Shown here: positions 1 through 63,509 of the stretch, piece after piece
How positions within the stretch are numbered: position 1 is the stretch's first letter
Layout of the letters: every line of letters begins with the position of its first letter
Source of the DNA: Oculina patagonica
Lineage: Eukaryota
Assembly: GCF_052425735.1 (NCBI RefSeq)
Contig: NC_135771.1
Location: 124,001 to 188,000 of the forward strand
Reading direction: 5' to 3'
DNA: 64,000 nt
Notes under the pieces: model-generated
Database searches by the model: none
Told to the model about the DNA's origin: nothing
Seen by the model: only the letters and a program-made list of their open reading frames with translations
Program-made: the position numbers and the translations under genes

Positions 1-1029
1 TTGGAACCAATCAGCTGTGTAACTAAAGGCTTTAAGTGGAAATTGGTTTTGATGCTAAGTTTATTATTATTTGCTGCTTTGTTTAGTATAAGGAAAACTG
101 AAGCATAACTGGTGAAAGTTGTCCCTTACTTCTAATTTTTTGCTTTTAAACCCAGGCTGTCTTTACCGTCTTGAATGGGTTACCCTGGATGTAGGCTGTT
201 ACCCTATCTCCTTGTAAATAGGGCCTTAAAACAATGAGACTTACAGTTTAAAGAATTTTTGGTACTGCAAAAATATTTAATATATATATTATAACTTTTT
301 CTTTTCCTGAAGTCAAATTATTTATTTATAAAATCTGATAATTTTCTGAACAGGTACCTGCTAGCTCAATACATTTAGTTTAGGGTCTGTAAAATATTAT
401 TCAAAATATGCTTGCACAGTTGTTTTAAAGAGTCATGTGCTGTAAGCTACGAAGTGAGGTACATACTATTCTTGTGCTGCACCTGATTTTTATTTCATTT
501 GAGAGGAAGTTGACACTATAATATGATAATGTTTTCAAGGTAATTTTATTTTAGGCAGCCGACATGCATGGTATATAGTTAATAGGGGTTTACCTTGTAA
601 GAAATAGTGTATCTTACAAGTATAGATAGAGTTTTGTAGCTCAATAGTTTTTGAAGGCTCATAGTTAATGGCAGAAATACCTCTAGTTTGCACAAGTTCC
701 AAAATGTAACTATTGCATAACACCAATTTTTTTTAACATTTTTGACTTAATAATTCTAAATTAGGAATTCTCTTAAACATTATTTTATTTGCTCAGGATT
801 GATACTGGAAAAATTAAGACCAGAACAAATATCACAAAAGTGCAAACTTCTTGAAATTATGAAGTGAACAGTTCTAGAGAGAAATGACTGGGAAATATTG
901 TTAGTATTATAATTATTTATTCACCAGTTGAAAGCTTTTTCCTTCTAATGACCTTCTTACTATTCCAAAAAATTAACAATAAATTATATATTGTACATAC
1001 GATCCTGCTGTATTGAAAATCGTTATTAA

Positions 1030-11312: not shown

Positions 11313-12483
11313 GTCCCAGATGTCGCAGGAGCAGCCTGGTGTGTCACATGTCAAACTCGCGCGAATCACGTGACAAGCATGCGTTTAATGAGTTCCAGTC
11401 CAAACTGAGGCGCCGACAAATGGACTATGATTAAGAATAATAAAAGTAATGTTACATATTTATCTTTTAAACTAAAAATTCAATTTCGCCTCAAGTACAC
11501 AGCTGCTCGACGGACACCACCTTGGTGTTTTGAAGGATAAATGGTTTTTAAGTAGACAAGTATCTTGTTTCGGCGTCAAAAGACTATATTTTTTAGACAA
11601 TGTTGTAGGTAGGACAGAAAAATAAGGAACTCATTCTTTTCTGTGTCATCATCACAAACCGGATATTTTACATGCTCAATCTGCCTGTAGATTTGATGAC
11701 ATGTTTTGGTCTATGTAAAATAATGGCTGTCAAAATAATAACCGCAATGTATAGAAAGACTACAACTTTCATGGTTACGTCAGTAAAAACTTACGATACT
11801 GAACTGATTTTAGTTTTCATGTTGATATCCGGCTGAAGATATAAATAAATTTACCCTCCGGCAAAAGATGTATATTTAAATTACGGGAATTGGGATATTT
11901 CCATTTCGCCCTCAATAAGGGTACAGGAAATGTTAAGAAAATTGTTGACAATTATTAAAGTAGCTAGGTAGATCTTTGAAAATGGTTTTGTAAAATAAGG
12001 GCATCTGAAATAAAAGTGATTATTTTAAGTTTGTCTTGTTTGTTATTTTGTTTTAAATTAGCTGGTAAGAGGTCTAAGGCTTTTCTTTTAGTCTGTTTTA
12101 CTGTGTAAGTTGTGTTTATTTATACAGATGTAACTTCTTGAACCTTTCCCAAGAGTGTTTGTGTTTTTACATTCTGGGTAGTTTGTAGAAGTAGAATTTA
12201 TTTCGAAATGCAAACAATTTTTCTCTGTGATATATATAACGTTCTTTTTAAAATGACCACCACCAACAACAACAACAACTTTTTTCGTACCCAAATTAAA
12301 ATTAGATATGCATCTATATTAAGACATAGTATTCAGAATTTCTAGATCAAAACAACGATAAAGACAAAGTTTACGCGATCAAGTTTGTATAGTCCGGTTT
12401 GAAGTAGAACCTCTGAGATTCTGTTTGTTTTTTCTTACTGGCGTACTTTTCTTGTAAAGTAATGTGATATTTTCGTTTTAATT

Positions 12484-12529
12484 TTACGTCAATCATAAGA
12501 GGCCCCGTGGGACTTATTTATGTATAAAA
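12484..12529 (+). promoter_or_regulatory. Putative core promoter of the DNase gene (CRE-like TTACGTCA and TATAAAA); retained in every unit
   Basis: TATAAAA at 12523-12529, ~60 bp before ATG 12584; TTACGTCA at 12484-12491. Confidence 0.45.
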
Positions 12530-12583
12530 CGCGTTTGGTTCGTTAGGACAGCTTTGTTCATGTGGGTTGTTGGTGAGGGTAAA

Positions 12584-15500
12584 ATGGATTTAAGCCTGGT
12601 CCTGGTATTTTGTGCTGCGACATTGTCTCTGGTGCACACCAACCATGTCTTGGACTCAGTGCAGCGCAATACACTGCATGCAGACAGTATTATCCAGACA
12701 TCCTTTGGCTTTCGTGACGAACACGGTGAGCAGACGAAAAGAAGCGAGACAAGTTCGATTGTGTCAAGCCCTCAGAAAAAGCGACGAAGTGTGAGCTCTG
12801 ATCCATCCAACCTTAAGCTTGCAGCTTTCAACGTACGAACATTTGGTACCAAGAAAATGGCAACACCAGGTGTGCCAGATATTCTTGTCAAGGTTGGTAT
12901 GTTGTCCTTGCATTTTGTCGATGTTTCAAAAATCTTGGAGAGTGCATCTTACTACAATATAACACTAGCAACACTGGTGGCTCTTGTTTTTTTTTTTTTT
13001 TTTTTTTTTTCGTTTTGATTTTTGTTGTGTGTGTATGGACTCTATCGTTGAATCTCGGAAAGCTTTGTCGCGAGTATCTATACAGTGACGTCACGTGACG
13101 TCTGTTGTAAAAGTAAAATTTGTATCGCTCGCTTGTGAGAAAAAATTCATGTTACTCAAGCCAAAAAGTTGCCTTTTGTTTAGTGATTTTACTGTAACAA
13201 TCGCCTTTCCACGATTTAAATGTAAACACAAAAGTGAAAATATAGCCAATCGAACTTGCAGAGATGTATCTGGAACTGAAGATCCAGAAATTAGAAGTTT
13301 TGCCTTTATGTAGTAGGTTGCATTTCTGGCCTTGGGTTGTGAAAGCGGCAAAAATCGACACGTAAATATAGAAGTAAATAAATGCGTGACATAATTTTAC
13401 GATTTACTATTTTTACTGCTGTAAAGCATCATTTAACTGCTTGCAGTGTCGATTTTTCTGCCAAAACCGAAGTGAACTTGAAATTACTGTCATGCCGCAT
13501 GAACAAGGACCAACAAGCGGTGAGTTCTTAATGGCGGTGACGACAATACATCCCGAATGCCGCGCGGCATTCGGAATTCGTTCGTACCGCTCGCGGTTTC
13601 TGTAGAATGATAAAGACTGCTGGTAGTATATGTTTTTAAGTATTCTTGTCCCATGTGAACTCTTTTTTGACTGCCGTGATATTTGCAGATTATTCTTCGT
13701 TATGATGTCATTCTCATTCAGGAGATCAGAGACGCGTCTGGAAAAGCGATTCAACAGCTGCTGTCCTTGGTAAACAAGTCAGTATACACCAAGTCAAGAT
13801 TAATGTTGTATTTCAATTGCGCGTCAGTTTTTGTGCATGTTAGTGTATTTTTTTTATTCTCCGAATGAATCCTGTAGGTATTCCACCAAAGGTCTGTACA
13901 AGATCACCATGAGCCCGCGACTTGGAAGAACCTCCAGTAAAGAACAATACGCATTCTTGTACAGGTCAGTCCCTGATAGTGCGGGTGATTTGAGTTACAA
14001 TAGCCGACAGGAAAGCAAAGATTTTCCTTCTCCTTGTGTTTATACCTATTCCTAGTGAGGACAGCATAAGGAGAATGAGTGTGTCCGTTTTTCTTATGCA
14101 CTTCTTTTGCTTGTGTTTTTGTTTCCGGGTTAGGGTTGTTTCGATTTGCTTTCTGAATGCTGGGTATCATCTACATTATCAACAAGAGAAGACCTATGCG
14201 TTCTAAGTTCTTATCCTTCAGCGTGTACGTGTTGCGTTCTTCATTAGGTACTGGGTGCAGTAACTAGACATGATCAGGCTTACAACTAAGTATGTCTCAC
14301 TAGCCCGACGAGAGTGGTGACGGATTGTAGTATACGTTTAATGTGTTATGTGGCTTTGATTACTTTAGGAAGGACGTTTTATCTGTTAAACACACCTATG
14401 TTTACGATGACGGGAAAGAAGAGCTAAAAACAGACACATTTGAAAGAGAACCGTACATTGTGCACTTTACTTCCACTCGAACTAGTAAGTAAATATCTCG
14501 CATTTCTGTCTTGAAGGAATCCTTAGAAAAGATAGAAAATACCATGTTATTAGCCGTTTAAGTGCGAGTATGTATCGAAAAGACTGCGCCTTGATGTCAT
14601 TGTAGAATAACAATTTTCATTTGCGATCTTAACTTGTGGTAAATAATACAACTTTCACTAGGAAGATAACTTATAACTGACTCCAAAGCGTTCGAGGTTT
14701 TCTCCCTTAAAAGTTAAGTTTTAACCTTTTAAGCCGTGTTTTTAATTAAAAATGGCTGAACTGTAACTGGGTTAATTTGTGCGGTGGTTACAAAATAATC
14801 CTTGCTTTTCGTGTCTTTATCTTCAGATCTAACCGATTTCGTACTCGTCGCTATCCATACATCTCCGTCCAAAGCTAATCAAGAAATCCACGAGCTTGCC
14901 GCTGTGTATGATGACGTCACCAAGAAGCTTGCCATCACAAATGTGATCATTCTCGGTGACTTAAACGCCGCCTGCAGTTATATGAGTGACAGTGATTGGA
15001 AGACCAACCGTTTGGCTAATGACAATCGATTTCATTGGCTCATTTCTGACTGTGTTGACACCACTGTGACTGGAGGGCACTGTGCATATGATCGGCAAGT
15101 AATTTAGGTTTTTGTTGGATGACAGCTAAGTTTTTTCGTGAGAGCGGAGTTCATGCAGCGCCGGTAAAAATAATCCAGTCTCAGAGTAGGGGTGTGGGTG
15201 GGAGGTGTAGTATAAAGCGCTCGTGATGATGACCCACTTCACTCCTCAAATTCATTGGATTAGAAAAGACTATTTTACGCTGTGACAACGAATTTTACTT
15301 AGGGGTGTTCTAGTCCTATTAACTTGTAATTGTTTTGTGATAAAGACGAGTTAGAATCCATTTCTTGTACTGTCATAATGTCTTAATCTTCATCAACGTC
15401 GACTCGTTTCATTTTATCTGTTATTTTTAGATTCGTAGTTGCTGGAGACGCCATATTAGATGCAGTCAGCGAATCAAGTCCAGGAAGCTATAAATATGAT

Positions 15501-16585
15501 GAAGATTTGAACATCAACAAAACTATGGTAAAGACCCTGTAATCTACCGAGTGGCCATTTTTATTCTGTTAACGCGTTTTATATCAAGACTGGCTTTTTT
15601 TTGCTTTTGCTTCAATGTCGGAGTACAATATCCTTTGTTGCAGGGGAACCATCAAAATGGATTTGGAAATAATTTTTAGTAACAAGCCTTAGTAAGGGGA
15701 GTGAAAAGCGGACATTTTTTTATAACGAGCTTTTCTCGTACGATAAAATTAAAGGAAAGAATTGGACGTTGGTACGAGTCTGTCTTGTGTATAGTAACAA
15801 AATGTGATTTTGAGGCGTCTATACACTCTATTTAGAGATCCATTATCTAATAAATTACCGAATGTTGATTAATTTCAGGCATTACTTGTAAGCGATCACT
15901 ATCCCGTTGAAATGCAACTTTACTCAAAAGGTAAGTCTCAGTTCATTTTAGGTTTTTGAATAAACTGATCAATTTCTGTATGTGATATTTGATTCTATTT
16001 GATAGCTTCTTTTTTCCTTACATGGTCAACACGACTAACTTGTGAGGTAAATATCTAGCGCAGATTACTGTTAAAAGTTCACCAAAGACAGACAGGTGAC
16101 GAAAAAATGGAAAGCAAGCCACTTGAGGAAATTATTTTGATTTACCACAACTAACATTATAAAAATGTATGGCAGTAAGTTTGGAATTTGTTTTTTCTTT
16201 TCTGACAGAGTTAGCTAAAGCAATGGCTCAAATATCCAAGGCGGTTGAATACACTTATAAAATGAAGCAGCATCCAAGCTTGAGACGATCTACTGTTTAT
16301 GGAATGAGGAAGAAGAAGGCAATCAAAGATGCAGGATTCAAAGTGGAAACAACATACAGTGTGACGTTCAGCAAAGACTTTAAGAGCTTAAAAGAAGCTA
16401 TGAATGCTATTCGTGTCATAAAAGATAATATGATAAAGGTTAATATGATCTCTTTTGATCAGACTCAAAATGCAGAGTTCCACTTGAATGAAGTATGGGT
16501 AAAGGAAAAGCAAACCGGAACTGTCAAGATTGTTTGTAAAACGTCTCCCCAAACAACTTGCTGGATTGCTCTGTTACAAGACTGA
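12584..16585 (+). CDS. Secreted deoxyribonuclease I-family protein, copy 1 (464 aa predicted)
   Basis: Exons 12584-12892, 13689-13777, 13878-13964, 14369-14484, 14827-15094 (GC donor), 15431-15527, 15879-15930, 16209-16585. DNase I motifs [59 protein letters not shown]. Hydrophobic N-terminal signal peptide. Confidence 0.93.
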
Positions 16586-17173
16586 TGACAAATCGACAGA
16601 ATCATGAACGGATTGTTTTTTAAGTTCTAAGCGATTATTTCCTGCTCTTATTTCGTGGTTCAATTAAAATAAGACTTCTCCGCACTGGCTGACATTACAT
16701 CTTTTTGTAGTATGATATCATAGTTATTATTCCAACTCCCCTTCCTGAAGTCCTTCACCCTACCGATCCCCCCTCGCACTTTGCACCCCTCGCTTATTGC
16801 ACCTCTCACCCCCCCCCCCCCTCCTTCCTCTTCTATCACGTTCATTAAAGAGGCAGCTGATCCTTCCCCTCCCCTCCGTTACGCTTCCCTGAGAGCAGAT
16901 AGAGGTAGGTTAGCACTCATCCCCATACGTCAAACTGACATTCCTCTTTCACATGTTCAGTGATGGCTGCCACTGTCCTTACCGTCCAGTCAACCACTGT
17001 GATGTGGCTGTGCGCATGCGTAAGGTACCAAATTAAGAAATCATCTAAATGCACAAACAAAATGACAATAGAAACTAACCTTTTTTAACAAAAAAAAATA
17101 TCTAAAAATAACACGCAAACTGCGGTGATAAACATTACGGACAAACGCATTGTTAGAAAAAAATAGACCTTTT

Positions 17174-17213
17174 ACTTGACGTTTCGTATGCTTCAACATG
17201 CATCTTCAGAAGC
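17174..17213 (-). ncRNA. Minimal hammerhead ribozyme-like motif of Penelope type (one per unit; copy 2 core at 23965-23996)
   Basis: Minus strand reads gcuu-CUGAAGA-U-GCAUG-uugaag-CAUAC-GAAAC-GUC-aagu. It has the conserved core, a stem II with one mismatch and a 4-bp stem I. Confidence 0.55.
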
Positions 17214-17524
17214 TAGAAGAAACCGTTAAAATGAAAGTACAACTAAATTTAAATTCGAAAAATAACAGGATTGACAGATGACGAAAAACAGATGATGAAA
17301 GAGAAAAATAATAATAAATAAAATACAATGAAATAACGATTTGCACAAAACAAATTGTGCAAACTAGTAAAGATAAAAAATATAACACAAACAGCGGTAA
17401 TGGTTAAAAACATTAACGCTGTTTGTGTTATATTTTTAATCAAGTTAGACAAGTTACGATGGCCTAAAACCGAGAGTCTATATAGTAAAGATACTGAGAT
17501 TTTCGCTGACACATTATCATTCAC

Positions 17525-19024
17525 CAGGCGCGTAGCTGACGTCAATATTTCAAACTCGATGGAGTGTAAAATAACAGGTATTTTTAGTCATAACAACAAT
17601 ATTTCCGGAGTTTTGTTAACTTGATACATTTACATACCGGCTTAGTACACTAAACGTTTTACAAAAGCTTGACGTGTGCTGCAAAGGCATCTCAGGGTAA
17701 AAGCTTAAGCCCCCCACCCCTCGGTTCCACCGTCAATGTACTAAAAGCAGCGTCAAAGCGTCTATATGCACTAAATACACGTATCACCTGGGTCCCCCGA
17801 AATTTTATTCCCCGCCTTTCGTCTATTGATACTCCATTTATCAAATCCCGAACGCCTGTCAAGGAAATATTTTTCAACGATGGGATTATTTTTTGCGGGC
17901 CCAAGAGAGGCCCGCAACCCTAATCTTGACAGTGACCAGCGGATTGCGTTTTACGCGTGCGCGCCACGTTAATAAAAAGCGAACAGAAAACGGAAGTTGA
18001 AAATTTTGTTCTTCCACTAAGAACGATCGGAATGCGAAAAATGTGTCAATCACGACAGTTTGTCGTAACACCGGAAGAGAAAATCTGTTCTCCAAGAACA
18101 ATTGTCATTCTGTCACATGAAAGATTGCAAACATTACAATTTGCAGACGTGTTTTACGGGTGTTGCTTTTGCGAAAATTTGCTCTGATTGTATCACGCAT
18201 AAACCACGGCAAAGCAGATGATTCCAAAAACGGTTTTTCTCGAGAAATTCGTTATAACACTGACAACATAGCGAGTTTATCAACCGAGGAAAATCACATC
18301 TCAATTCACACCGCGTGTCCGACTACAGTTCACTAAACTGTCAATCCGACAAAAGACAACTCTGACTGGTTCGCGGCCGGTTAGCGGCAATTAAGCGTGA
18401 TTTATCATTAATCGCGCCACGTTAATAAAAGGCGAGCACAACATAGCGAGTTTACCGATTGAGAAAAATCACATCTCAATTCACACCGCGTGCTCGATTA
18501 CACTTCCCAAAACGATAAAAACACGCATTCCTTGCGTGACGCGTTACTCGGGATAATTGTCTTTTGTCCATTTAATCATTTATTTATCGACACTGCCATC
18601 TAAAATTACTCACTCTCGTACCAGTACCTTTTCTAAGTGCGTCAAGGCCCGCACTTTCTAACCTGTGGTTACCACTAGTACTACATATAATACTAGGTCA
18701 CTAGGATATATTGAGGCCACTTACTAACTAATTCACTACAGGACTATTCGTAAAGCAAACTTGACAATTGCATCATCCTCGGGTGAAGGCCTTGAAATAG
18801 ATTGATAATTTCGTCCAGATCGACAGGCATACTGATACTTGATATGCATGAGAGCCAGTGAGGAGAGCCCATTCTCCTTACAATTTAATACTTTCCCGAT
18901 ACTTTTAGCGTTTTCTTGCAGGGTAATGTAAACGCTGCGACACTGCGACGTTTCCCATTCCCCCACTATTTGCTAAAGGCTGAAAATCAACAGTTTGTGT
19001 TTTCAGTCCTCCATTATTGACCTC
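17525..19024 (-). mobile_element. hAT-derived non-autonomous element truncated by the array junction (also 24312-25811, 31097-32596, 37884-39383)
   Basis: Starts CAGGCGCGTAG and lacks the opposite terminus. Contains a transposase C-terminal remnant at ~18745-18880. Confidence 0.75.
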
Positions 19025-19383
19025 TCTGTGATATATTTAACGTTCTTTTTAAAATGACCACCACCACCACCAACAACAACTTTTTTCGTACCCAAATTAA
19101 AATTAGATATGCATCTATATTAAGACATAGTATTCAGAATTTCTAGATCAAAACAACGATAAAGACAAAGTTTACGCGATCAAGTTTGTATAGTCCCGTC
19201 TGAAGTAGAACCTCTGAGATTCTGTTTGTTTTTCTTACTGGCGTACTTTTCTTGAAAAGTAATGTGATATTTTCGTTTTAATTTTACGTCAATCATAAGA
19301 GGCCCCGTGGGACTTATTTATGTATAAAACGCGTTTGGTTCGTTAGGACAGCTTTGTTCATGTGGGTTGTTGGTGAGGGTAAA

Positions 19384-22300
19384 ATGGATTTAAGCCTGGT
19401 CCTGGTATTTTGTGCTGCGACATTGTCTCTGGTGCACACCAACCATGTCTTGGACTCAGTGCAGCGCAATACACTGCATGCAGACAGTATTATCCAGACA
19501 TCCTTTGGCTTTCGTGACGAACACGGTGAGCAGACGAAAAGAAGCGAGACAAGTTCGATTGTGTCAAGCCCTCAGAAAAAGCGACGAAGTGTGAGCTCTG
19601 ATCCATCCAACCTTAAGCTTGCAGCTTTCAACGTACGAACATTTGGTACCAAGAAAATGGCAACACCAGGTGTGCCAGATATTCTTGTCAAGGTTGGTAT
19701 GTTGTCCTTGCATTTTGTCGATGTTTCAAAAATCTTGGAGAGTGCATCTTACTACAATATAACACTAGCAACACTGGTGGCTCTTGTTTTTTTTGTTTTT
19801 TTCGTTTTGATTTTTGTTGTGTGTGTATGGACTCTATCGTTGAATCTCGGAAAGCTTTGTCGCGAGTATCTATACAGTGACGTCACGTGACGTCTGTTGT
19901 AAAAGTAAAATTTGTATCGCTCGCTTGTGAGAAAAAATTCATGTTACTCAAGCCAAAAAGTTGCCTTTTGTTTAGTGTTTTTACTGTAACAATCGCCTTT
20001 CCACGATTTAAATGTAAACACAAAAGTGAAAATATAGCCAATCGAACTTGCAGAGATGTATCTGGAACTGAAGATCCAGAAATTAGAAGTTTTGCCTTTA
20101 TGTAGTAGGTTGCATTTCTGGCCTTGGGTTGTGAAAGCGGCAAAAATCGACACGTAAATATATAAGTAAATAAATGCGTGACATAATTTTACGATTTACT
20201 ATTTTTACTGCTGTAAAGCATCATTTAACTGCTTGCAGTGTCGATTTTTCTGCCAAAACCGAAGTGAACTTGAAATTACTGTCATGCCGCATGAACAAGG
20301 ACCAACAAGCGGTGAGTTCTTAATGGCGGTGACGACAATACTTCCCGAATGCCGCGCGGCATTCGGAATTCGTTCGTACCGCTCGCGGTTTCTGTAGAAT
20401 GATAAAGACTGCTGGTAGTATATATTTTTAAGTATTCTTGTCCCATGTGAACTCTTTTTTGACTGCCGTGATATTTGCAGATTATTCTTCGTTATGATGT
20501 CATTCTCATTCAGGAGATCAGAGACGCGTCTGGAAAAGCGATTCAACAGCTGCTGTCCTTGGTAAACAAGTCAGTATACACCAAGTCAAGATTAATGTTG
20601 TATTTCAATTGCGCGTCAGTTTTTGTGCATGTTAGTGTATTTTTTTTATTCTCCGAATGAATCCTGTAGGTATTCCACCAAAGGTCTGTACAAGATCACC
20701 ATCAGCCCGCGACTTGGAAGAACCTCCAGTAAAGAACAATACGCATTCTTGTATAGGTCAGTCCCTGATAGTGCGGGTGATTTGAGTTACAATAGCCGAC
20801 AGGAAAGCAAAGATTTTCCTTCTCCTTGTATACCTATTCCTAGTGAGGACAGCATAAGGAGAATGAGTGTGTCCGTTTTTCTTATGCACTTCTTTTGCTT
20901 GTGTTTTTGTTTCCGGGTTAGGGTTGTTTCGATTTGCTTTCTGAATGCTGGGTATCATCTACATTATCAACAAGAGAAGACCTATGCGTTCTAAGTTCTT
21001 ATCCTTCAGCGTGTACGTGTTGCGTTCTTCATTAGGTACTGGGTGCAGTAACTAGACATGATCAGGCTTACAACTAAGTATGTCTCACTAGCCCGACGAG
21101 AGTGGTGACGGGTTGTAGTATACGTTTAATGTGTTATGTGGCTTTGATTACTTTAGGAAGGACGTTTTATCTGTTAAACACACCTATGTTTACGATGACG
21201 GGAAAGAAGAACTAAAAACAGACACATTTGAAAGAGAACCGTACATTGTGCACTTTACTTCCACTCGAACTAGTAAGTAAATATCTCGCATTTCTGTCTT
21301 GAAGGAATCCTTAGAAAAGATAGAAAATACCATGTTATTAGCCGTTTAAGTACGAGTATGTAGCGAAAAGACTACGCCTTGATGTCATTGTAGAATAACA
21401 ATTTTCATTTGCAATCTTAACTTGTGGTAAATAATACAACTTTCACTCGGACGATAACTTATAACTGACTCCAAACCGTTCGAGGTTTTCTCCCTTAAAA
21501 GTTAAGTTTTAACCTTTTAAGCCGTGTTTTTAATTAAAAATGGCTGAACTGTAACTGGGTTAATTTGTGCGGTGGTTACAAAATAATCCTTGCTTTTCGT
21601 GTCTTTATCTTCAGATCTAACCGATTTCGTACTCGTCGCTATCCATACATCTCCGTCCAAAGCTAATCAAGAAATTCACGAGCTTGCCGCTGTGTATGAT
21701 GACGTCACCAAGAAGCTTGCCATCACAAATGTGATCATTCTCGGTGACTTAAACGCCGCCTGCAGTTATATGAGTGACAGTGATTGGAAGACCAACCGTT
21801 TGGCTAATGACAATCGATTTCATTGGCTCATTTCTGACTGTGTTGACACCACTGTGACTGGAGGGCACTGTGCATATGATCGGCAAGTAATTTAGGTTTT
21901 TGTTGGATGACAGCTTAGTTTTTTCGTGAGAGCGGTGTTCATGCAGCGCCGGTAAAAATAATTCAGTCTCAGAGTAGGGGGGTGGGTGGGAGGTGTAGTA
22001 TAAAGCGCTCGTGATGATGACGCACTTCACTCCTCAAATTCATTGTATTAGAAAAGACTATTTTACGCTGTGACAACGAATTTTACTTAGGGGTGTTCTA
22101 GTCCTATTAACTTGTAATTGTTTTGTGATAAAGACGAGTTAGAATCCATTTCTTGTACTGTCATAATGTCTTAATCTTTATCAACGTCGACTCGTTTCAT
22201 TTTATCTGTTATTTTTAGATTCGTAGTTGCTGGAGACGCCATATTAGATGCAGTCAGCGAATCAAGTCCAGGAAGCTATAAATATGATGAAGATTTGAAC

Positions 22301-23373
22301 ATCAACAAAACTATGGTAAAGACCCTGTAATCTACCGAGTGGTCATTTTTATTCTGTTAACGCGTTTCATATCAAGACTGGCTTTTTTTTGCTTTTGCTT
22401 CAATGTCGGAGTACAATATCCTTTGTTGCAGGGGAACCATCAAAATGGATTTGGAAATAATTTTTAGTAACAAGCCTTAGTAAGGGGAGTGAAAAGCGGA
22501 CATTTTTTTATAACGAGCTTTTCTCGTACGATAAAATTAAAGGAAAGAATTGGACGTTGGTACGAGTCTGTCTTGTGTATAGTAACAAAATGTGATTTTG
22601 AGGCGTCTATACACTCTATTTAGAGATCCATTTTCTAATAAATTACCGAATGTTGATTAATTTCAGGCATTACTTGTAAGCGATCACTATCCCGTAGAAA
22701 TGCAACTTTACTCAAAAGGTAAGTCTCAGTTCATTTTAGGTTTTTGAATAAACTGATCAATTTCTGTATGTGATATTTGATTCTATTTGATAGCTTCTTT
22801 TTTCCTTACATGGTCAACACGACTAACTTGTGAGGTAAATATCTAGCGCAGATTACTGTTAAAAGTTCACCAAAGACAGACAGGTGACGAAAAAATGGAA
22901 AGCAAGCCACTTGAGGAAATTATTTTGATTTACCACAACTAACATTATACAAATGTATGGCAGTAAGTTTGGAATTTGTTTTTTCTTTTCTGACAGAGTT
23001 AGCTAAAGCAATGGCTCAAATATCCAAGGCGGTTGAATACACTTATAAAATGAAGCAGCATCCAAGCTTGAGACGATCTACTGTTTATGGAATGAGGAAG
23101 AAGAAGGCAATCAAAGATGCAGGATTCAAAGTGGAAACAACATACAGTGTGACGTTCAGCAAAGACTTTAAGAGCTTAAAAGAAGCTATGAATGCTATTC
23201 GTGTCATAAAAGATAATATGATAAAGGTTAATATGATCTCTTTTGATCAGACTCAAAATGCAGAGTTCCACCTGAATGAAGTATGGGTAAAGGAAAAGCA
23301 AACCGGAACTGTCAAGATTGTTTGTAAAACGTCTCCCCAAACAACTTGCTGGATTGCTCTGTTACAAGACTGA
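19384..23373 (+). CDS. Secreted DNase I-family protein, copy 2
   Basis: Same exon structure as copy 1, with reading frame intact. One amino-acid change seen (KITMSP to KITISP). Confidence 0.92.
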
Positions 23374-26170
23374 TGACAAATCGACAGAATCATGAACGGA
23401 TTGTTTTTTAAGTTCTAAGCGATTATTTCCTGCTCTTATTTCGTGGTTCAATTAAAATAAGACTTCTCCGCACTGGCTGACATTACATTTTTTTGTAGTA
23501 TGATATCATAGTTATTATTCCAACTCCCCTTCCTGAAGTCCTTCACCCTACCGATCCCCCCCTCGCACTTTGCACCCCTCGCTTATTGCACCTCTCACCC
23601 CCCCCCCTCCTTCCTCTTCTATCACGTTCATTAAAGAGGCAGCTGATCCTTCCCCTCCCCTCCGTTACGCTTCCCTGAGAGCAGATAGAGGTAGGTTAGC
23701 ACTCATCCCCATACGTCAAACTGACATTCCTCTTTCACATGTTCAGTGATGGCTGCCACTGTCCTTACCGTCCAGTCAACCACTGTGATGTGGCTGTGCG
23801 CATGCGTAAGGTACCAAATTAAGAAATCATCTAAATGCACAAACAAAATGACAATAGAAACTAACCTTTTTTAACAAAAAAAAAATATCTAAAAATAACA
23901 CGCAAACTGCGGTGATAAACATTACGGACAAACGCATTGTTAGAAAAAAATAGACCTTTTACTTGACGTTTCGTATGCTTCAACATGCATCTTCAGAAGC
24001 TAGAAGAAACCGTTAAAATGAAAGTACAACTAAATTTAAATTCGAAAAATAACAGGATTGACAGATGACGAAAAACAGATGATGAAAGAGAAAAATAATA
24101 ATAAATAAAATACAATGAAATAACGATTTGCACAAAACAAATTGTGCAAACTAGTAAAGATAAAAAATATAACACAAACAGCGGTAATGGTAAAAAACAT
24201 TACCGCTGTTTGTGTTATATTTTTAATCAAGTTAGACAAGTTACGATGGCCTAAAACCGAGAGTCTATATAGTAAAGATACTGAGATTTTCGCTGACACA
24301 TTATCATTCACCAGGCGCGTAGCTGACGTCAATATTTCAAACTCGATGGAGTGTAAAATAACAGGTATTTTTAGTCATAACAACAATATTTCCGGAGTTT
24401 TGTTAACTTGATACATTTACATACCGGCTTAGTACACTAAACGTTTTACAAAAGCTTGACGTGTGCTGCAAAGGCATCTCAGGGTAAAAGCTTAAGCCCC
24501 CCACCCCTCGGTTCCACCGTCAATGTACTAAAAGCAGCGTCAAAGCGTCTATATGCACTAAATACACGTATCACCTGGGTCCCCCGAAATTTTATTCCCC
24601 GCCTTTCGTCTATTGATACTCCATTTATCAAATCCCGAACGCCTGTCAAGGAAATATTTTTCAACGATGGGATTATTTTTTGCGGGCCCAAGAGAGGCCC
24701 GCAACCCTAATCTTGACAGTGACCAGCGGATTGCGTTTTACGCGTGCGCGCCACGTTAATAAAAAGCGAACAGAAAACGGAAGTTGAAAATTTTGTTCTT
24801 CCACTAAGAACGATCGGAATGCGAAAAATGTGTCAATCACGACAGTTTGTCGTAACACCGGAAGAGAAAATCTGTTCTCCAAGAACAATTGTCATTCTGT
24901 CACATGAAAGATTGCAAACATTACAATTTGCAGACGTGTTTTACGGGTGTTGCTTTTGCGAAAATTTGCTCTGATTGTATCACGCATAAACCACGGCAAA
25001 GCAGATGATTCCAAAAACGGTTTTTCTCGAGAAATTCGTTATAACACTGACAACATAGCGAGTTTATCAACCGAGGAAAATCACATCTCAATTCACACCG
25101 CGTGTCCGACTACAGTTCACTAAACTGTCAATCCGACAAAAGACAACTCTGACTGGTTCGCGGCCGGTTAGCGGCAATTAAGCGTGATTTATCATTAATC
25201 GCGCCACGTTAATAAAAGGCGAGCACAACATAGCGAGTTTACCGATTGAGAAAAATCACATCTCAATTCACACCGCGTGCTCGATTACACTTCCCAAAAC
25301 GATAAAAACACGCATTCCTTGCGTGACGCGTTACTCGGGATAATTGTCTTTTGTCCATTTAATCATTTATTTATCGACACTGCCATCTAAAATTACTCAC
25401 TCTCGTACCAGTACCTTTTCTAAGTGCGTCAAGGCCCGCACTTTCTAACCTGTGGTTACCACTAGTACTACATATAATACTAGGTCACTAGGATATATTG
25501 AGGCCACTTACTAACTAATTCACTACAGGACTATTCGTAAAGCAAACTTGACAATTGCATCATCCTCGGGTGAAGGCCTTGAAATAGATTGATAATTTCG
25601 TCCAGATCGACAGGCATACTGATACTTGATATGCATGAGAGCCAGTGAGGAGAGCCCATTCTCCTTACAATTTAATACTTTCCCGATACTTTTAGCGTTT
25701 TCTTGCAGGGTAATGTAAACGCTGCGACACTGCGACGTTTCCCATTCCCCCACTATTTGCTAAAGGCTGAAAATCAACAGTTTGTGTTTTCAGTCCTCCA
25801 TTATTGACCTCTCTGTGATATATTTAACGTTCTTTTTAAAATGACCACCACCACCACCAACAACAACTTTTTTCGTACCCAAATTAAAATTAGATATGCA
25901 TCTATATTAAGACATAGTATTCAGAATTTCTAGATCAAAACAACGATAAAGACAAAGTTTACGCGATCAAGTTTGTATAGTCCCGTCTGAAGTAGAACCT
26001 CTGAGATTCTGTTTGTTTTTCTTACTGGCGTACTTTTCTTGAAAAGTAATGTGATATTTTCGTTTTAATTTTACGTCAATCATAAGAGGCCCCGTGGGAC
26101 TTATTTATGTATAAAACGCGTTTGGTTCGTTAGGACAGCTTTGTTCATGTGGGTTGTTGGTGAGGGTAAA

Positions 26171-29100
26171 ATGGATTTAAGCCTGGTCCTGGTATTTTGT
26201 GCTGCGACATTGTCTCTGGTGCACACCAACCATGTCTTGGACTCAGTGCAGCGCAATACACTGCATGCAGACAGTATTATCCAGACATCCTTTGGCTTTC
26301 GTGACGAACACGGTGAGCAGACGAAAAGAAGCGAGACAAGTTCGATTGTGTCAAGCCCTCAGAAAAAGCGACGAAGTGTGAGCTCTGATCCATCCAACCT
26401 TAAGCTTGCAGCTTTCAACGTACGAACATTTGGTACCAAGAAAATGGCAACACCAGGTGTGCCAGATATTCTTGTCAAGGTTGGTATGTTGTCCTTGCAT
26501 TTTGTCGATGTTTCAAAAATCTTGGAGAGTGCATCTTACTACAATATAACACTAGCAACACTGGTGGCTCTTGTTTTTTTTGTTTTTTTCGTTTTGATTT
26601 TTGTTGTGTGTGTATGGACTCTATCGTTGAATCTCGGAAAGCTTTGTCGCGAGTATCTATACAGTGACGTCACGTGACGTCTGTTGTAAAAGTAAAATTT
26701 GTATCGCTCGCTTGTGAGAAAAAATTCATGTTACTCAAGCCAAAAAGTTGCCTTTTGTTTAGTGTTTTTACTGTAACAATCGCCTTTCCACGATTTAAAT
26801 GTAAACACAAAAGTGAAAATATAGCCAATCGAACTTGCAGAGATGTATCTGGAACTGAAGATCCAGAAATTAGAAGTTTTGCCTTTATGTAGTAGGTTGC
26901 ATTTCTGGCCTTGGGTTGTGAAAGCGGCAAAAATCGACACGTAAATATATAAGTAAATAAATGCGTGACATAATTTTACGATTTACTATTTTTACTGCTG
27001 TAAAGCATCATTTAACTGCTTGCAGTGTCGATTTTTCTGCCAAAACCGAAGTGAACTTGAAATTACTGTCATGCCGCATGAACAAGGACCAACAAGCGGT
27101 GAGTTCTTAATGGCGGTGACGACAATACTTCCCGAATGCCGCGCGGCATTCGGAATTCGTTCGTACCGCTCGCGGTTTCTGTAGAATGATAAAGACTGCT
27201 GGTAGTATATATTTTTAAGTATTCTTGTCCCATGTGAACTCTTTTTTGACTGCCGTGATATTTGCAGATTATTCTTCGTTATGATGTCATTCTCATTCAG
27301 GAGATCAGAGACGCGTCTGGAAAAGCGATTCAACAGCTGCTGTCCTTGGTAAACAAGTCAGTATACACCAAGTCAAGATTAATGTTGTATTTCAATTGCG
27401 CGTCAGTTTTTGTGCATGTTAGTGTATTTTTTTTATTCTCCGAATGAATCCTGTAGGTATTCCACCAAAGGTCTGTACAAGATCACCATCAGCCCGCGAC
27501 TTGGAAGAACCTCCAGTAAAGAACAATACGCATTCTTGTATAGGTCAGTCCCTGATAGTGCGGGTGATTTGAGTTACAATAGCCGACAGGAAAGCAAAGA
27601 TTTTCCTTCTCCTTGTATACCTATTCCTAGTGAGGACAGCATAAGGAGAATGAGTGTGTCCGTTTTTCTTATGCACTTCTTTTGCTTGTGTTTTTGTTTC
27701 CGGGTTAGGGTTGTTTCGATTTGCTTTCTGAATGCTGGGTATCATCTACATTATCAACAAGAGAAGACCTATGCGTTCTAAGTTCTTATCCTTCAGCGTG
27801 TACGTGTTGCGTTCTTCATTAGGTACTGGGTGCAGTAACTAGACATGATCAGGCTTACAACTAAGTATGTCTCACTAGCCCGACGAGAGTGGTGACGGGT
27901 TGTAGTATACGTTTAATGTGTTATGTGGCTTTGATTACTTTAGGAAGGACGTTTTATCTGTTAAACACACCTATGTTTACGATGACGGGAAAGAAGAACT
28001 AAAAACAGACACATTTGAAAGAGAACCGTACATTGTGCACTTTACTTCCACTCGAACTAGTAAGTAAATATCTCGCATTTCTGTCTTGAAGGAATCCTTA
28101 GAAAAGATAGAAAATACCATGTTATTAGCCGTTTAAGTACGAGTATGTAGCGAAAAGACTACGCCTTGATGTCATTGTAGAATAACAATTTTCATTTGCA
28201 ATCTTAACTTGTGGTAAATAATACAACTTTCACTCGGACGATAACTTATAACTGACTCCAAACCGTTCGAGGTTTTCTCCCTTAAAAGTTAAGTTTTAAC
28301 CTTTTAAGCCGTGTTTTTAATTAAAAATGGCTGAACTGTAACTGGGTTAATTTGTGCGGTGGTTACAAAATAATCCTTGCTTTTCGTGTCTTTATCTTCA
28401 GATCTAACCGATTTCGTACTCGTCGCTATCCATACATCTCCGTCCAAAGCTAATCAAGAAATTCACGAGCTTGCCGCTGTGTATGATGACGTCACCAAGA
28501 AGCTTGCCATCACAAATGTGATCATTCTCGGTGACTTAAACGCCGCCTGCAGTTATATGAGTGACAGTGATTGGAAGACCAACCGTTTGGCTAATGACAA
28601 TCGATTTCATTGGCTCATTTCTGACTGTGTTGACACCACTGTGACTGGAGGGCACTGTGCATATGATCGGCAAGTAATTTAGGTTTTTGTTGGATGACAG
28701 CTTAGTTTTTTCGTGAGAGCGGTGTTCATGCAGCGCCGGTAAAAATAATTCAGTCTCAGAGTAGGGGGGTGGGTGGGAGGTGTAGTATAAAGCGCTCGTG
28801 ATGATGACGCACTTCACTCCTCAAATTCATTGTATTAGAAAAGACTATTTTACGCTGTGACAACGAATTTTACTTAGGGGTGTTCTAGTCCTATTAACTT
28901 GTAATTGTTTTGTGATAAAGACGAGTTAGAATCCATTTCTTGTACTGTCATAATGTCTTAATCTTTATCAACGTCGACTCGTTTCATTTTATCTGTTATT
29001 TTTAGATTCGTAGTTGCTGGAGACGCCATATTAGATGCAGTCAGCGAATCAAGTCCAGGAAGCTATAAATATGATGAAGATTTGAACATCAACAAAACTA

Positions 29101-30160
29101 TGGTAAAGACCCTGTAATCTACCGAGTGGTCATTTTTATTCTGTTAACGCGTTTCATATCAAGACTGGCTTTTTTTTGCTTTTGCTTCAATGTCGGAGTA
29201 CAATATCCTTTGTTGCAGGGGAACCATCAAAATGGATTTGGAAATAATTTTTAGTAACAAGCCTTAGTAAGGGGAGTGAAAAGCGGACATTTTTTTATAA
29301 CGAGCTTTTCTCGTACGATAAAATTAAAGGAAAGAATTGGACGTTGGTACGAGTCTGTCTTGTGTATAGTAACAAAATGTGATTTTGAGGCGTCTATACA
29401 CTCTATTTAGAGATCCATTTTCTAATAAATTACCGAATGTTGATTAATTTCAGGCATTACTTGTAAGCGATCACTATCCCGTAGAAATGCAACTTTACTC
29501 AAAAGGTAAGTCTCAGTTCATTTTAGGTTTTTGAATAAACTGATCAATTTCTGTATGTGATATTTGATTCTATTTGATAGCTTCTTTTTTCCTTACATGG
29601 TCAACACGACTAACTTGTGAGGTAAATATCTAGCGCAGATTACTGTTAAAAGTTCACCAAAGACAGACAGGTGACGAAAAAATGGAAAGCAAGCCACTTG
29701 AGGAAATTATTTTGATTTACCACAACTAACATTATACAAATGTATGGCAGTAAGTTTGGAATTTGTTTTTTCTTTTCTGACAGAGTTAGCTAAAGCAATG
29801 GCTCAAATATCCAAGGCGGTTGAATACACTTATAAAATGAAGCAGCATCCAAGCTTGAGACGATCTACTGTTTATGGAATGAGGAAGAAGAAGGCAATCA
29901 AAGATGCAGGATTCAAAGTGGAAACAACATACAGTGTGACGTTCAGCAAAGACTTTAAGAGCTTAAAAGAAGCTATGAATGCTATTCGTGTCATAAAAGA
30001 TAATATGATAAAGGTTAATATGATCTCTTTTGATCAGACTCAAAATGCAGAGTTCCACCTGAATGAAGTATGGGTAAAGGAAAAGCAAACCGGAACTGTC
30101 AAGATTGTTTGTAAAACGTCTCCCCAAACAACTTGCTGGATTGCTCTGTTACAAGACTGA
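26171..30160 (+). CDS. Secreted DNase I-family protein, copy 3
   Basis: Exon translations appear identical to copy 2. Confidence 0.92.
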
Positions 30161-35900: not shown

Positions 35901-36945
35901 AATCTACCGAGTGGTCATTTTTATTCTGTTAACGCGTTTCATATCAAGACTGGCTTTTTTTTGCTTTTGCTTCAATGTCGGAGTACAATATCCTTTGTTG
36001 CAGGGGAACCATCAAAATGGATTTGGAAATAATTTTTAGTAACAAGCCTTAGTAAGGGGAGTGAAAAGCGGACATTTTTTTATAACGAGCTTTTCTCGTA
36101 CGATAAAATTAAAGGAAAGAATTGGACGTTGGTACGAGTCTGTCTTGTGTATAGTAACAAAATGTGATTTTGAGGCGTCTATACACTCTATTTAGAGATC
36201 CATTTTCTAATAAATTACCGAATGTTGATTAATTTCAGGCATTACTTGTAAGCGATCACTATCCCGTAGAAATGCAACTTTACTCAAAAGGTAAGTCTCA
36301 GTTCATTTTAGGTTTTTGAATAAACTGATCAATTTCTGTATGTGATATTTGATTCTATTTGATAGCTTCTTTTTTCCTTACATGGTCAACACGACTAACT
36401 TGTGAGGTAAATATCTAGCGCAGATTACTGTTAAAAGTTCACCAAAGACAGACAGGTGACGAAAAAATGGAAAGCAAGCCACTTGAGGAAATTATTTTGA
36501 TTTACCACAACTAACATTATACAAATGTATGGCAGTAAGTTTGGAATTTGTTTTTTCTTTTCTGACAGAGTTAGCTAAAGCAATGGCTCAAATATCCAAG
36601 GCGGTTGAATACACTTATAAAATGAAGCAGCATCCAAGCTTGAGACGATCTACTGTTTATGGAATGAGGAAGAAGAAGGCAATCAAAGATGCAGGATTCA
36701 AAGTGGAAACAACATACAGTGTGACGTTCAGCAAAGACTTTAAGAGCTTAAAAGAAGCTATGAATGCTATTCGTGTCATAAAAGATAATATGATAAAGGT
36801 TAATATGATCTCTTTTGATCAGACTCAAAATGCAGAGTTCCACCTGAATGAAGTATGGGTAAAGGAAAAGCAAACCGGAACTGTCAAGATTGTTTGTAAA
36901 ACGTCTCCCCAAACAACTTGCTGGATTGCTCTGTTACAAGACTGA
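32956..36945 (+). CDS. Secreted DNase I-family protein, copy 4
   Basis: Exon translations appear identical to copy 2. Confidence 0.92.

Positions 36946-54777: not shown

Positions 54778-63509
<8,732 letters not shown>

What the first reader, a model, noticed from the sequence alone, without database searches (positions are those of the whole stretch)
12584..12811. DNase I with a ~50-aa propeptide ending in dibasic sites (pro-DNase)
Seen: after the signal peptide (~aa 1-19) come ~57 residues containing EQTKR (52-53) and KKRR (65-68; 12776-12787). The mature-type start LKLAAFN follows at aa 77. Known: in vertebrate DNase I, LKIAAFN follows the signal peptide directly; many cnidarian nematocyst proteins and toxins are made with KR-terminated propeptides. 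Inference: a convertase-processed, possibly granule- or nematocyst-sorted nuclease.
Basis: partly seen in the sequence, partly recalled or inferred. Interest (0 to 1): 0.7.

Follow-up and report, generated by a model that had tools for sequence, protein, structure and literature searches.

The report
Coral DNase I with a spacer
A stony coral (Oculina patagonica) carries five tandem copies of a secreted DNase I-like gene whose protein has a floppy 57-residue spacer with paired basic residues between the export signal and the enzyme; this looks like a clip-off pro-segment, but cleavage and the cell type that makes it are untested.

Summary
Window 12584-12811 encodes aa 1-76 of an intact 8-exon gene. 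The spliced product of tandem copies 2-5 is identical to NCBI 'deoxyribonuclease-1-like [Oculina patagonica]' (464 aa); the flagged copy 1 differs by one residue.

- **Layout:** a hydrophobic leader (about aa 1-19) and a 57-aa spacer with KR at 52-53 and KKRR at 65-68. The DNase I domain starts at aa 77, which aligns with residue 1 of mature bovine DNase I. All catalytic and metal residues and the essential disulfide are present.
- **Spacer:** it is predicted disordered and evolves fast, at 10-32% identity between coral genera against 71-81% for the enzyme.
- **Basic pair:** 7 of 9 anthozoan lineages keep one 8-24 residues before the domain. Porites lutea and Nematostella lack it. In Oculina alone a dibasic is no more than chance (65% of shuffles), but a run of four basics is rare (0.9%).

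Convertase processing is therefore plausible (about 0.5) but unproven. Nematocyst sorting has no direct support. No folded inhibitory prodomain is predicted.

Also found: a five-copy tandem array (12222-46179) and a conserved C-terminal domain of about 125 aa with no Pfam or PDB match.

Verdict: a new variant of a known kind, of moderate interest.

The parts
12584..16585 (+). Copy 1 of the DNase I-like gene. Eight exons: 12584-12892, 13689-13777, 13878-13964, 14369-14484, 14827-15094, 15431-15527, 15879-15930, 16209-16585 (stop included). The product is 464 aa.
   Evidence: Splice model built from the sequence. It matches NCBI protein P0152 except for M144I. It is colinear with an orthologous transcript contig across all seven junctions.
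12584..12640 (+). Predicted signal peptide, aa 1-19 (h-region aa 3-17).
   Evidence: Hydropathy and the -3/-1 rule. No SignalP was available, so the cleavage point is inferred.
12641..12811 (+). 57-aa spacer or putative pro-segment, aa 20-76. It is Ser-rich (12 of 57) with net charge +1.
   Evidence: AlphaFold pLDDT is below 50 for aa 32-73. It has no counterpart in vertebrate DNase I. Identity between coral genera is 10-32%.
12737..12742 (+). First dibasic site, K52-R53 (context EQTKR|S).
   Evidence: Read from the sequence. In the L-INS-i alignment it lines up with the KRR and RMRR sites of Pocillopora and Stylophora.
12776..12787 (+). Second basic cluster, K65-K66-R67-R68, 8 residues before the DNase domain.
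   Evidence: Read from the sequence. A run of four or more basics occurs in 0.9% of shuffles. It aligns with the RR/KR sites of Porites lobata, Acropora and Montipora.
12812..15926 (+). DNase I (EEP) catalytic domain, aa 77-338, spread over exons 1-7.
   Evidence: PF03372, E = 3.4e-20. Bovine DNase I residues 1-259 align with aa 77-336, E = 3e-68. Foldseek TM 0.95-0.97 to DNase I structures.
15095..15430 (+). Intron 5, with a GC-AG boundary (donor GCAAGT).
   Evidence: The same donor is present in all five copies. The junction is spanned without a break by the orthologous transcript.
16209..16585 (+). Exon 8: an unnamed conserved C-terminal domain (aa 340-464) plus the stop codon.
   Evidence: No Pfam family. 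A local profile finds it on 57 invertebrate DNase I-like proteins. AlphaFold pLDDT 91.8. No PDB fold match at E < 0.001.
12523..12529 (+). TATAAAA, 61 nt upstream of the ATG at 12584. A likely core promoter element.
   Evidence: Pattern search. It is identical in all five copies. Its function is inferred.
12222..46179 (+). Tandem array of five whole units (6785-6800 bp each), each carrying one intact gene copy. The unit boundaries are at 19023, 25810, 32595 and 39382.
   Evidence: Units are 99.1-100% identical. Only one amino-acid difference exists among the copies (M144I, copy 1).
19384..19692 (+). Exon 1 of copy 2 (leader, spacer and start of the domain), identical to copy 1.
26171..26479 (+). 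Exon 1 of copy 3, identical to copy 1.
32956..33264 (+). Exon 1 of copy 4, identical to copy 1.
39743..40051 (+). Exon 1 of copy 5, identical to copy 1.

Best explanation
The gene encodes a secreted DNase I-family endonuclease made as a prepro-type precursor.

**Shown**
- A complete, catalytically competent DNase I domain.
- A hydrophobic leader.
- A disordered, fast-evolving 57-aa spacer carrying KR53 and KKRR68.
- A conserved extra C-terminal domain.
- Five intact tandem copies.

**Inferred**
- After the signal peptide is removed, a subtilisin-like proprotein convertase in the late secretory pathway clips the spacer at KKRR68|S69, and possibly also at KR53|S54.
- This would release an enzyme that starts 8 residues before the canonical DNase I N-terminus.
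- The spacer is not a folded inhibitory prodomain. It more likely acts as a processing or sorting spacer for a regulated secretory compartment, in a gland cell or a cnidocyte. Which of the two is open.
- The five-fold amplification suggests demand for high output, as for a digestive or defensive secreted enzyme.
For: **Enzyme identity**
- Domain identity.
- Catalytic and metal residues N83, E115, E155, H211, D245, N247, D289 and H329, and the C250-C286 pair, align with their bovine counterparts. They are invariant or nearly so among 48 homologues.

**The spacer is real**
- It is absent from vertebrate DNase I.
- It is disordered.
- It is encoded in the same exon as the leader and the start of the domain, in Oculina and Pocillopora.
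- It is present in NCBI models and in orthologous transcript contigs.

**The basic pair is retained**
- Oculina, Pocillopora (KRR), Stylophora (RMRR, a canonical R-x-R-R), an unnamed coral (RR), Porites lobata (RR), Montipora (KR) and Acropora (KR) all keep one.
- The surrounding spacer is only 10-32% identical.
- A KKRR-like run occurs in 0.9% of shuffles.

**Precedent**
[quoted passage not shown] The pro-part of Cnidoin is 90 aa and is removed in vivo (PMC4321713).
- Actinoporin pro-parts end in KR, with consensus EDQKEQ/HKR (PMC6025637). Oculina reads DEHGEQTKR.
Against: - There is no direct evidence of cleavage.
- A dibasic anywhere in a spacer of this composition is expected in 65% of shuffles.
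- The position of the basic pair shifts between alignments.
- P. lutea, Nematostella P0170 and transcript variant P0271 lack it.
- KKRR has Lys, not Arg, at P4, so it is not an ideal furin site.
- The spacer is not acidic, unlike the classical nematocyst pro-parts.
- DNase I needs no zymogen latency in the DNA-free secretory lumen, so a functional need for a propeptide is not obvious.
- The cross-lineage statistic ignores shared ancestry.
Confidence: 0.5

Rival explanations
1. Unprocessed N-terminal tail. The spacer stays on the mature secreted enzyme as a disordered, Ser-rich (possibly O-glycosylated) extension. The basic residues are incidental, or help bind DNA or other polyanions, much as the basic tail of DNase1L3 helps it act on complexed DNA.
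For: - A dibasic is expected by chance in 65% of shuffles.
- Some orthologues and one transcript variant lack it.
- 10 of the 23 residues around KKRR are Ser or Thr.
- No structure or contacts are predicted for the spacer.
- DNase1L3 is a close structural relative.
Against: - Orthologues keep only a pair of basics (KR or RR). That is too little for a polyanion-binding patch or an NLS-like motif, but enough for a convertase.
- The pair persists while everything around it changes.
- The DNase1L3 tail is C-terminal, and the C-terminus here is occupied by a folded domain.
Confidence: 0.33
2. Nematocyst venom DNase. The pro-segment directs the enzyme into the nematocyst vesicle of cnidocytes, and the nuclease is discharged with the venom.
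For: - DNase activity has been reported in nematocyst venom of Physalia and Chrysaora (table in PMC7600780) and of Velella. The Velella nematocyst proteome lists an 'Endonuclease/exonuclease/phosphatase family protein' (PMC11509761).
- The architecture of a KR-terminated pro-part is typical of nematocyst proteins (PMC4321713).
- Tandem amplification is common for venom genes (general knowledge).
Against: - I found no expression or proteome data for this gene or its orthologues.
- The hydrozoan (Hydractinia P0045) and octocoral (P0182) homologues have no spacer.
- The Physalia and Chrysaora enzymes were 75 and 110 kDa, not about 45-50 kDa.
- The Velella protein was not shown to belong to the DNase I family.
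- Dibasic processing is equally typical of gland-cell and neuropeptide precursors.
Confidence: 0.15
3. Gene-model artefact. The true mRNA starts or splices downstream, so the spacer is not translated with the enzyme.
For: - NCBI and GenBank models disagree about the start. Copy 1 is 472 aa from the in-frame ATG at 12560, and the GenBank models are 441 aa.
- I could not inspect any Oculina RNA reads.
Against: - The leader, the spacer and the first 27 residues of the domain are one uninterrupted exon.
- Without this exon the protein would lack both its leader and beta-strand 1 with N83.
- Orthologous transcript contigs of 1.5-1.9 kb from Porites, Pocillopora, Montipora and Acropora clusters encode the leader, spacer and domain in one ORF.
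- A TATAAAA box lies 61 nt upstream, and the ATG at 12584 has A at -3 and G at +4.
Confidence: 0.03

Closest known systems
Vertebrate DNase I (bovine and human; PDB 1DNK, 4AWN, 9FJU)
   Same: - The EEP fold aligns end to end (aa 77-336 with residues 1-259, E = 3e-68, 43-44% identity, TM 0.95-0.97).
- All catalytic and metal residues and the C173-C209 equivalent disulfide are present.
- It has a secretory leader.
   Different: - There are 57 extra residues between the leader and the first residue of the domain.
- The C101-C104 loop disulfide is absent.
- There is an extra folded C-terminal domain of about 125 aa.
- The gene is present as five tandem copies.
DNase1L3 / DNase gamma (PDB 7KIU)
   Same: It is a DNase I paralogue with an appended basic segment outside the catalytic domain, and a close sequence and structure match (E = 3.7e-63).
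   Different: The basic segment of DNase1L3 is a short C-terminal tail kept on the mature enzyme. Here the basic cluster is N-terminal, sits in a disordered spacer, and is reduced to a bare KR or RR in orthologues.
Prepro-architecture of cnidarian nematocyst proteins and toxins (Cnidoin, minicollagens, actinoporins)
   Same: Each has a signal peptide, then a polar pro-part ending in a basic pair, then the mature protein. Pro-part length is variable (15-90 aa) and poorly conserved (PMC4321713, PMC6025637).
   Different: - The cargo is a 45-kDa enzyme.
- The pro-part is not acidic overall.
- The last basic site lies 8-19 residues before the conserved start of the domain.
- Neither cleavage nor cnidocyte expression has been shown.
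Other invertebrate DNase-1-like proteins with the same C-terminal domain (Nematostella P0015 and P0170, Hydractinia P0045, Ptychodera, Branchiostoma, Haliotis, Lingula)
   Same: They share the two-domain architecture of DNase I plus the unnamed C-terminal domain with two conserved Cys.
   Different: Most start the DNase domain 1-10 residues after the leader. The long spacer with a basic pair is a feature of one scleractinian orthologue group.
Nematocyst venom endonucleases of Physalia physalis, Chrysaora quinquecirrha and Velella velella
   Same: They show DNase activity associated with cnidarian nematocyst contents (PMC7600780, PMC11509761).
   Different: They are defined only biochemically (75 and 110 kDa) or by a generic EEP-family proteome hit. 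No sequence link to this gene was established.

Membership tests
DNase I family (EEP superfamily, PF03372) | Full-length EEP/DNase I domain | tested here: met
   PF03372 covers aa 81-329, E = 3.4e-20. Bovine DNase I residues 1-259 align with aa 77-336, E = 3e-68. Foldseek TM 0.95-0.97, rmsd 1.3-1.8 A.
DNase I family (EEP superfamily, PF03372) | Catalytic His pair, acidic residues and metal ligands (bovine N7, E39, E78, H134, D168, N170, D212, H252) | tested here: met
   N83, E115, E155, H211, D245, N247, D289 and H329 occupy the aligned columns. They are invariant or at least 90% conserved in 18 and 48 homologues. The residue roles come from established knowledge of bovine DNase I.
DNase I family (EEP superfamily, PF03372) | Essential disulfide (bovine C173-C209) | tested here: met
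   C250 and C286 align with these residues and are nearly invariant. The C101-C104 pair is absent.
DNase I family (EEP superfamily, PF03372) | Mature enzyme begins directly after the signal peptide | tested here: not met
   57 residues lie between the predicted leader and the residue that aligns with bovine Leu1.
DNase I family (EEP superfamily, PF03372) | Divalent-cation-dependent endonuclease activity on DNA | not testable with these tools
   Inferred only from conserved residues.
Convertase-processed prepro-proteins (cnidarian nematocyst type) | N-terminal signal peptide | tested here: inconclusive
   A 15-residue hydrophobic core at aa 3-17 and a plausible V-H-T|N cleavage site. No dedicated predictor was available.
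Convertase-processed prepro-proteins (cnidarian nematocyst type) | Pro-part ends in an accessible Lys-Arg or Arg-Arg site | tested here: met
   KR 52-53 and KKRR 65-68 lie in a segment with pLDDT below 50. A basic pair is present in 7 of 9 lineages.
Convertase-processed prepro-proteins (cnidarian nematocyst type) | Acidic or polar pro-part composition | tested here: inconclusive
   The spacer is polar but has net charge +1 (K+R 8, D+E 7). Only the local stretch DEHGEQTKR resembles the actinoporin consensus quoted in PMC6025637.
Convertase-processed prepro-proteins (cnidarian nematocyst type) | The pro-part is actually removed in vivo | not testable with these tools
   I found no proteomic data.
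Convertase-processed prepro-proteins (cnidarian nematocyst type) | Expression in cnidocytes, or presence in nematocysts | not testable with these tools
   No expression data could be retrieved.
Zymogens with a folded inhibitory prodomain | The prodomain has a defined fold packing on the enzyme | tested here: not met
   AlphaFold gives pLDDT below 50 for aa 32-73. Only a low-confidence helix continues from the leader.
DNase1L3-type basic tail / NLS-bearing DNases | Conserved extended basic segment retained on the mature enzyme | tested here: not met
   A four-residue basic run occurs only in Oculina. Orthologues have a bare KR, RR or KRR, or none.

The most novel reading that the evidence does not exclude
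One scleractinian lineage of DNase I has acquired a cleavable sorting pro-segment. Together with the unnamed C-terminal domain, this makes it a regulated-secretion or nematocyst-delivered 'weaponised' nuclease, and in Oculina patagonica it has recently been amplified five-fold. It would be the first gene-level identification of the long-known cnidarian venom or defensive DNase activity, and the first DNase I made as a pro-enzyme.
Probability: 0.15. Interest if true: 0.65.

Novelty: new variant of a known kind. Interest (0 to 1): 0.4.

Why it matters
- **A pro-segment on DNase I:** DNase I is a textbook enzyme with no known pro-form. A conserved convertase-type site in a coral lineage would show that secreted nucleases can be routed and matured like cnidarian toxins and peptide precursors.
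- **A gene for an old activity:** it would give a candidate gene for the nematocyst or mucus DNase activities described biochemically since 1980.
- **Two further features worth follow-up:** the near-identical five-copy array suggests recent selection for dosage, or array homogenisation. The conserved, structurally unmatched C-terminal domain is found on DNase I-like proteins across cnidarians, hemichordates, amphioxus, molluscs, brachiopods and nemerteans.
- **If the spacer is not cleaved:** the finding reduces to an ordinary lineage-specific disordered extension.

Tried and rejected
- **Per-exon Pfam scans:** only exon 5 reached the cut-off. This was superseded once the whole protein id P0152 was recovered.
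- **Getting the whole protein:** the spliced protein could not be passed by reference. I searched the representative library with exon 5 alone, then used a full-length relative to retrieve the window's own protein.
- **Single-sequence search with the spacer:** no relative was found outside Oculina, so the spacer has no detectable family.
- **NLS or DNA-binding reading of KKRR:** rejected as the main reading, because orthologues keep only two basics.
- **Folded inhibitory prodomain:** rejected.
- **Gene-model artefact:** largely rejected.
- **Fold search for the C-terminal domain:** nothing significant.
- **Literature:** I looked for a pro-DNase I, for coral DNase expression, and for accession numbers of the orthologues. 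Nothing relevant came back beyond nematocyst DNase activity and KR pro-parts.
- **Stylophora cell-atlas supplements held as text:** no mention of the gene.
Full report
**What is there**

The flagged stretch, 12584-12811, is the first 228 nt of exon 1 of an 8-exon gene on the + strand. The exons are 12584-12892, 13689-13777, 13878-13964, 14369-14484, 14827-15094, 15431-15527, 15879-15930 and 16209-16585. Seven introns follow the usual rules and intron 5 has a GC-AG boundary.

The joined exons give a 464-aa protein:
- a hydrophobic leader (aa 1-19; core aa 3-17);
- a 57-residue spacer (aa 20-76) with K52-R53 and K65-K66-R67-R68;
- LKLAAFN from aa 77 onward.

**Identity of the gene and organism**

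A search of the representative library with exon 5, followed by a search with a full-length relative, returned P0152, 'deoxyribonuclease-1-like [Oculina patagonica]'. It is 464 aa and lies on a 25.6-Mb chromosome. It is 100% identical to my spliced model for four of the copies in the window and one residue different (M144I) for the flagged copy. So the window is from this stony coral, and NCBI's gene models include the spacer (accessions).

NCBI starts copy 1 at an in-frame ATG eight codons upstream (12560), giving 472 aa. That ATG has a poor initiation context, whereas 12584 has A at -3 and G at +4. A TATAAAA box lies at 12523. Either start leaves the leader and spacer intact.

**It is a complete DNase I**

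- Pfam PF03372 covers aa 81-329.
- Bovine DNase I residues 1-259 align with aa 77-336 (E = 3e-68), and residue 22 of the human precursor aligns with aa 76.
- The AlphaFold model of the domain superposes on DNase I crystal structures with TM 0.95-0.97.
- The counterparts of the bovine catalytic and metal-binding residues (N83, E115, E155, H211, D245, N247, D289, H329) and the essential disulfide (C250-C286) are all present. They are invariant or nearly so among homologues.
- The small C101-C104 loop disulfide of the bovine enzyme is absent.

**The spacer**

Relative to vertebrate DNase I, the 57 residues are an insertion between the leader and the first residue of the mature enzyme. In most of the homologues examined, the domain begins at residue 20-33. 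AlphaFold gives the spacer pLDDT below 50 for aa 32-73, so there is no sign of a folded prodomain. It is Ser-rich (12 of 57) and close to neutral.

The leader, the spacer and the first 27 residues of the domain, including beta-strand 1 and the metal ligand N83, lie in one exon. This holds in Oculina and in Pocillopora verrucosa.

Transcript-sized contigs of 1.5-1.9 kb encode the leader, spacer and domain in one open frame. They belong to the Porites, Pocillopora, Montipora and Acropora clusters. The Porites-cluster contig is colinear with my spliced CDS across all seven junctions.

**Is the dibasic signal more than chance?**

In Oculina alone, mostly not:
- a basic pair somewhere in a spacer of this composition appears in 65% of shuffles;
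- two separate clusters appear in 19% of shuffles;
- only the run of four basics is unusual, at 0.9%.

The comparative evidence is stronger. Orthology is supported by synteny: an oxysterol-binding-protein gene, the DNase, a DEP-domain gene and an amine oxidase lie in that order in Porites lutea, and the last three match the Oculina window. Between coral genera the spacer is only 10-32% identical, against 71-81% for the enzyme and 27-45% for the C-terminal domain.

| Lineage | Basic site 8-24 residues before the domain |
|---|---|
| Oculina | KKRR |
| Pocillopora (three species) | KRR |
| Stylophora | RMRR, a canonical R-x-R-R; one sequenced variant has RMGR |
| Unnamed coral | RR |
| Porites lobata | RR |
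| Montipora | KR |
| Acropora (five species) | KR |
| Porites lutea | none |
| Nematostella 441-aa homologue | none |
| Transcript variant P0271 of the unnamed coral | none (lacks the 13 residues that contain the site) |

Seven of nine lineages against about 0.2 expected for each gives P of about 3e-4 under independence. This overstates the case, because the lineages share ancestry and I chose the window after seeing the data.

Alignment in this region is also ambiguous. One method lines the pocilloporid site up with the Oculina KKRR, and another with the Oculina KR53.

**How it most likely works**

Shown: this is a secreted-type, catalytically complete DNase I with a disordered spacer bearing accessible basic sites.

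Inferred (confidence about 0.5): after the leader is removed, a subtilisin-like convertase cuts after R68, and perhaps after R53. The enzyme would then begin with eight extra residues before the canonical start.

The architecture matches what is documented for cnidarian nematocyst proteins and toxins. These have a signal peptide, a variable pro-part ending in Lys-Arg, then the mature protein. In Cnidoin the 90-aa pro-part is removed in vivo (PMC4321713). Actinoporin pro-parts have the consensus EDQKEQ/HKR (PMC6025637), and Oculina reads DEHGEQTKR before its first site. That likeness is a lead, not a test.

The spacer is unstructured. From my own knowledge of the fold, the N-terminus of DNase I lies at the far end of strand 1 from the active site. 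I therefore do not think the spacer acts as an inhibitory zymogen plug. A role in processing or sorting is more likely.

**Rivals**

1. *The spacer is simply retained (about 0.33).* It would be a Ser-rich, possibly glycosylated tail whose basics are incidental or help bind polyanions, as in DNase1L3. Against this, orthologues conserve only a bare pair of basics.
2. *Nematocyst venom DNase (about 0.15).* This is a special case of the main reading.
   - For: DNase activity is known from Physalia, Chrysaora and Velella nematocyst preparations, and an EEP-family protein is listed in the Velella nematocyst proteome (PMC7600780, PMC11509761).
   - Against: no sequence link exists, and the older enzymes were 75-110 kDa. 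The hydrozoan and octocoral homologues lack the spacer. I found no expression data.
3. *Gene-model artefact (about 0.03).*

**Comparison with known families**

It is a member of the DNase I family on every sequence and structure criterion I could test, except that the mature enzyme does not follow the leader directly. It resembles the cnidarian prepro-architecture, but membership cannot be claimed because cleavage and cell type are untested. I found no paper describing a DNase I with a propeptide. Absence from this library is weak evidence.

**Other things found**

- **Tandem array.** The gene sits in exactly five tandem units (12222-46179) of 6785-6800 bp.
  - Units are 99.1-100% identical. 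The three inner copies differ at only 2 positions, and the outer copies are more diverged.
  - All five coding sequences are intact.
  - Six exonic sites vary between copy 1 and the others, and only one changes an amino acid.
  - Pocillopora verrucosa has one copy. Porites lutea has one full copy plus partial duplicates of exons 1-2.
- **C-terminal domain.** Exon 8 encodes a domain of about 125 aa with no Pfam family.
  - It is confidently modelled (pLDDT 91.8) as an alpha/beta fold with two conserved Cys.
  - It has no PDB match at E < 0.001.
  - A local profile finds it on 57 of the retrieved DNase I-like proteins. These come from cnidarians, hemichordates, amphioxus, molluscs, a brachiopod and nemerteans.

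**Verdict**

This is a new variant of a known kind. The gene itself is already annotated, but the pro-segment idea is plausible, conserved enough to be worth testing, and unproven. Interest: 0.4.

All comparisons rest on the PDB hits.

Noticed in passing
window 12222-46179: Exactly five tandem units of about 6.79 kb, each with an intact copy of the gene. Units are 99.1-100% identical. The inner copies 2-4 differ at only 2 positions, and copies 1 and 5 are more diverged. The junctions are clean (...GACCTC|TCTGTGATATAT...). This is either a very recent amplification, ongoing homogenisation, or assembly expansion.
   Followed up: partly
window 16209-16585 (and exon 8 of the other four copies: 22997-23373, 29784-30160, 36569-36945, 43357-43733): An unnamed C-terminal domain of about 125 aa fused to DNase I. 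It has no Pfam family, a confident AlphaFold model (pLDDT 91.8) and no PDB fold match. It has two conserved Cys and occurs on DNase I-like proteins of many invertebrate phyla.
   Followed up: partly
window 15095-15430 and the equivalent intron in the other copies: A GC-AG intron (donor GCAAGT) after exon 5, conserved in all five copies.
   Followed up: yes
window 12560-12583: An in-frame upstream ATG eight codons before the ATG at 12584. NCBI uses it for copy 1 (472 aa) but not for copies 2-5 (464 aa). Its initiation context is poor, and it lies only about 37 nt after the TATA box.
   Followed up: partly
window 46819-47610 (+), 53350-54969 (-), 56653-57042 (+): The flanking genes are a DEP-domain exon, an apparently intronless 539-aa flavin amine oxidase ORF, and a membralin-like exon. 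The order DNase, DEP, amine oxidase is syntenic with Porites lutea (L003).
   Followed up: partly
proteins P0271 versus P0267 (unnamed coral, JGI transcripts); P0287 versus P0288 (Porites): One transcript variant lacks the 13 residues that hold the basic pair. Porites lutea has lost the pair that Porites lobata keeps. The site is therefore dispensable in at least some lineages or isoforms.
   Followed up: no
L003:10001-34199 (Porites lutea): The annotated DNase gene spans 24 kb. It contains two exon-1-like and two exon-2-like segments ahead of one complete copy, that is, partial tandem duplicates merged into a single gene model.
   Followed up: partly
window 1026-1367 and 2306-2656: A pair of inverted repeats of about 350 bp at 85% identity, upstream of the array. 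Possibly the ends of a transposable element.
   Followed up: no
window 16770-16870 (repeated in each unit) and 46190-46230: C-rich and CT-rich low-complexity tracts lie downstream of each gene copy and at the right edge of the array.
   Followed up: no
proteins P0124 (tardigrade Hypsibius), P0102 (marine eukaryote transcript), P0103 (nemertean Tubulanus): Other invertebrate DNase I-like proteins also carry N-terminal extensions. One has RVRR after the leader. One has a Cys-containing extra segment ending in KR three residues before the domain. One has a 55-aa spacer with no basic pair. N-terminal add-ons to DNase I have arisen several times.
   Followed up: no
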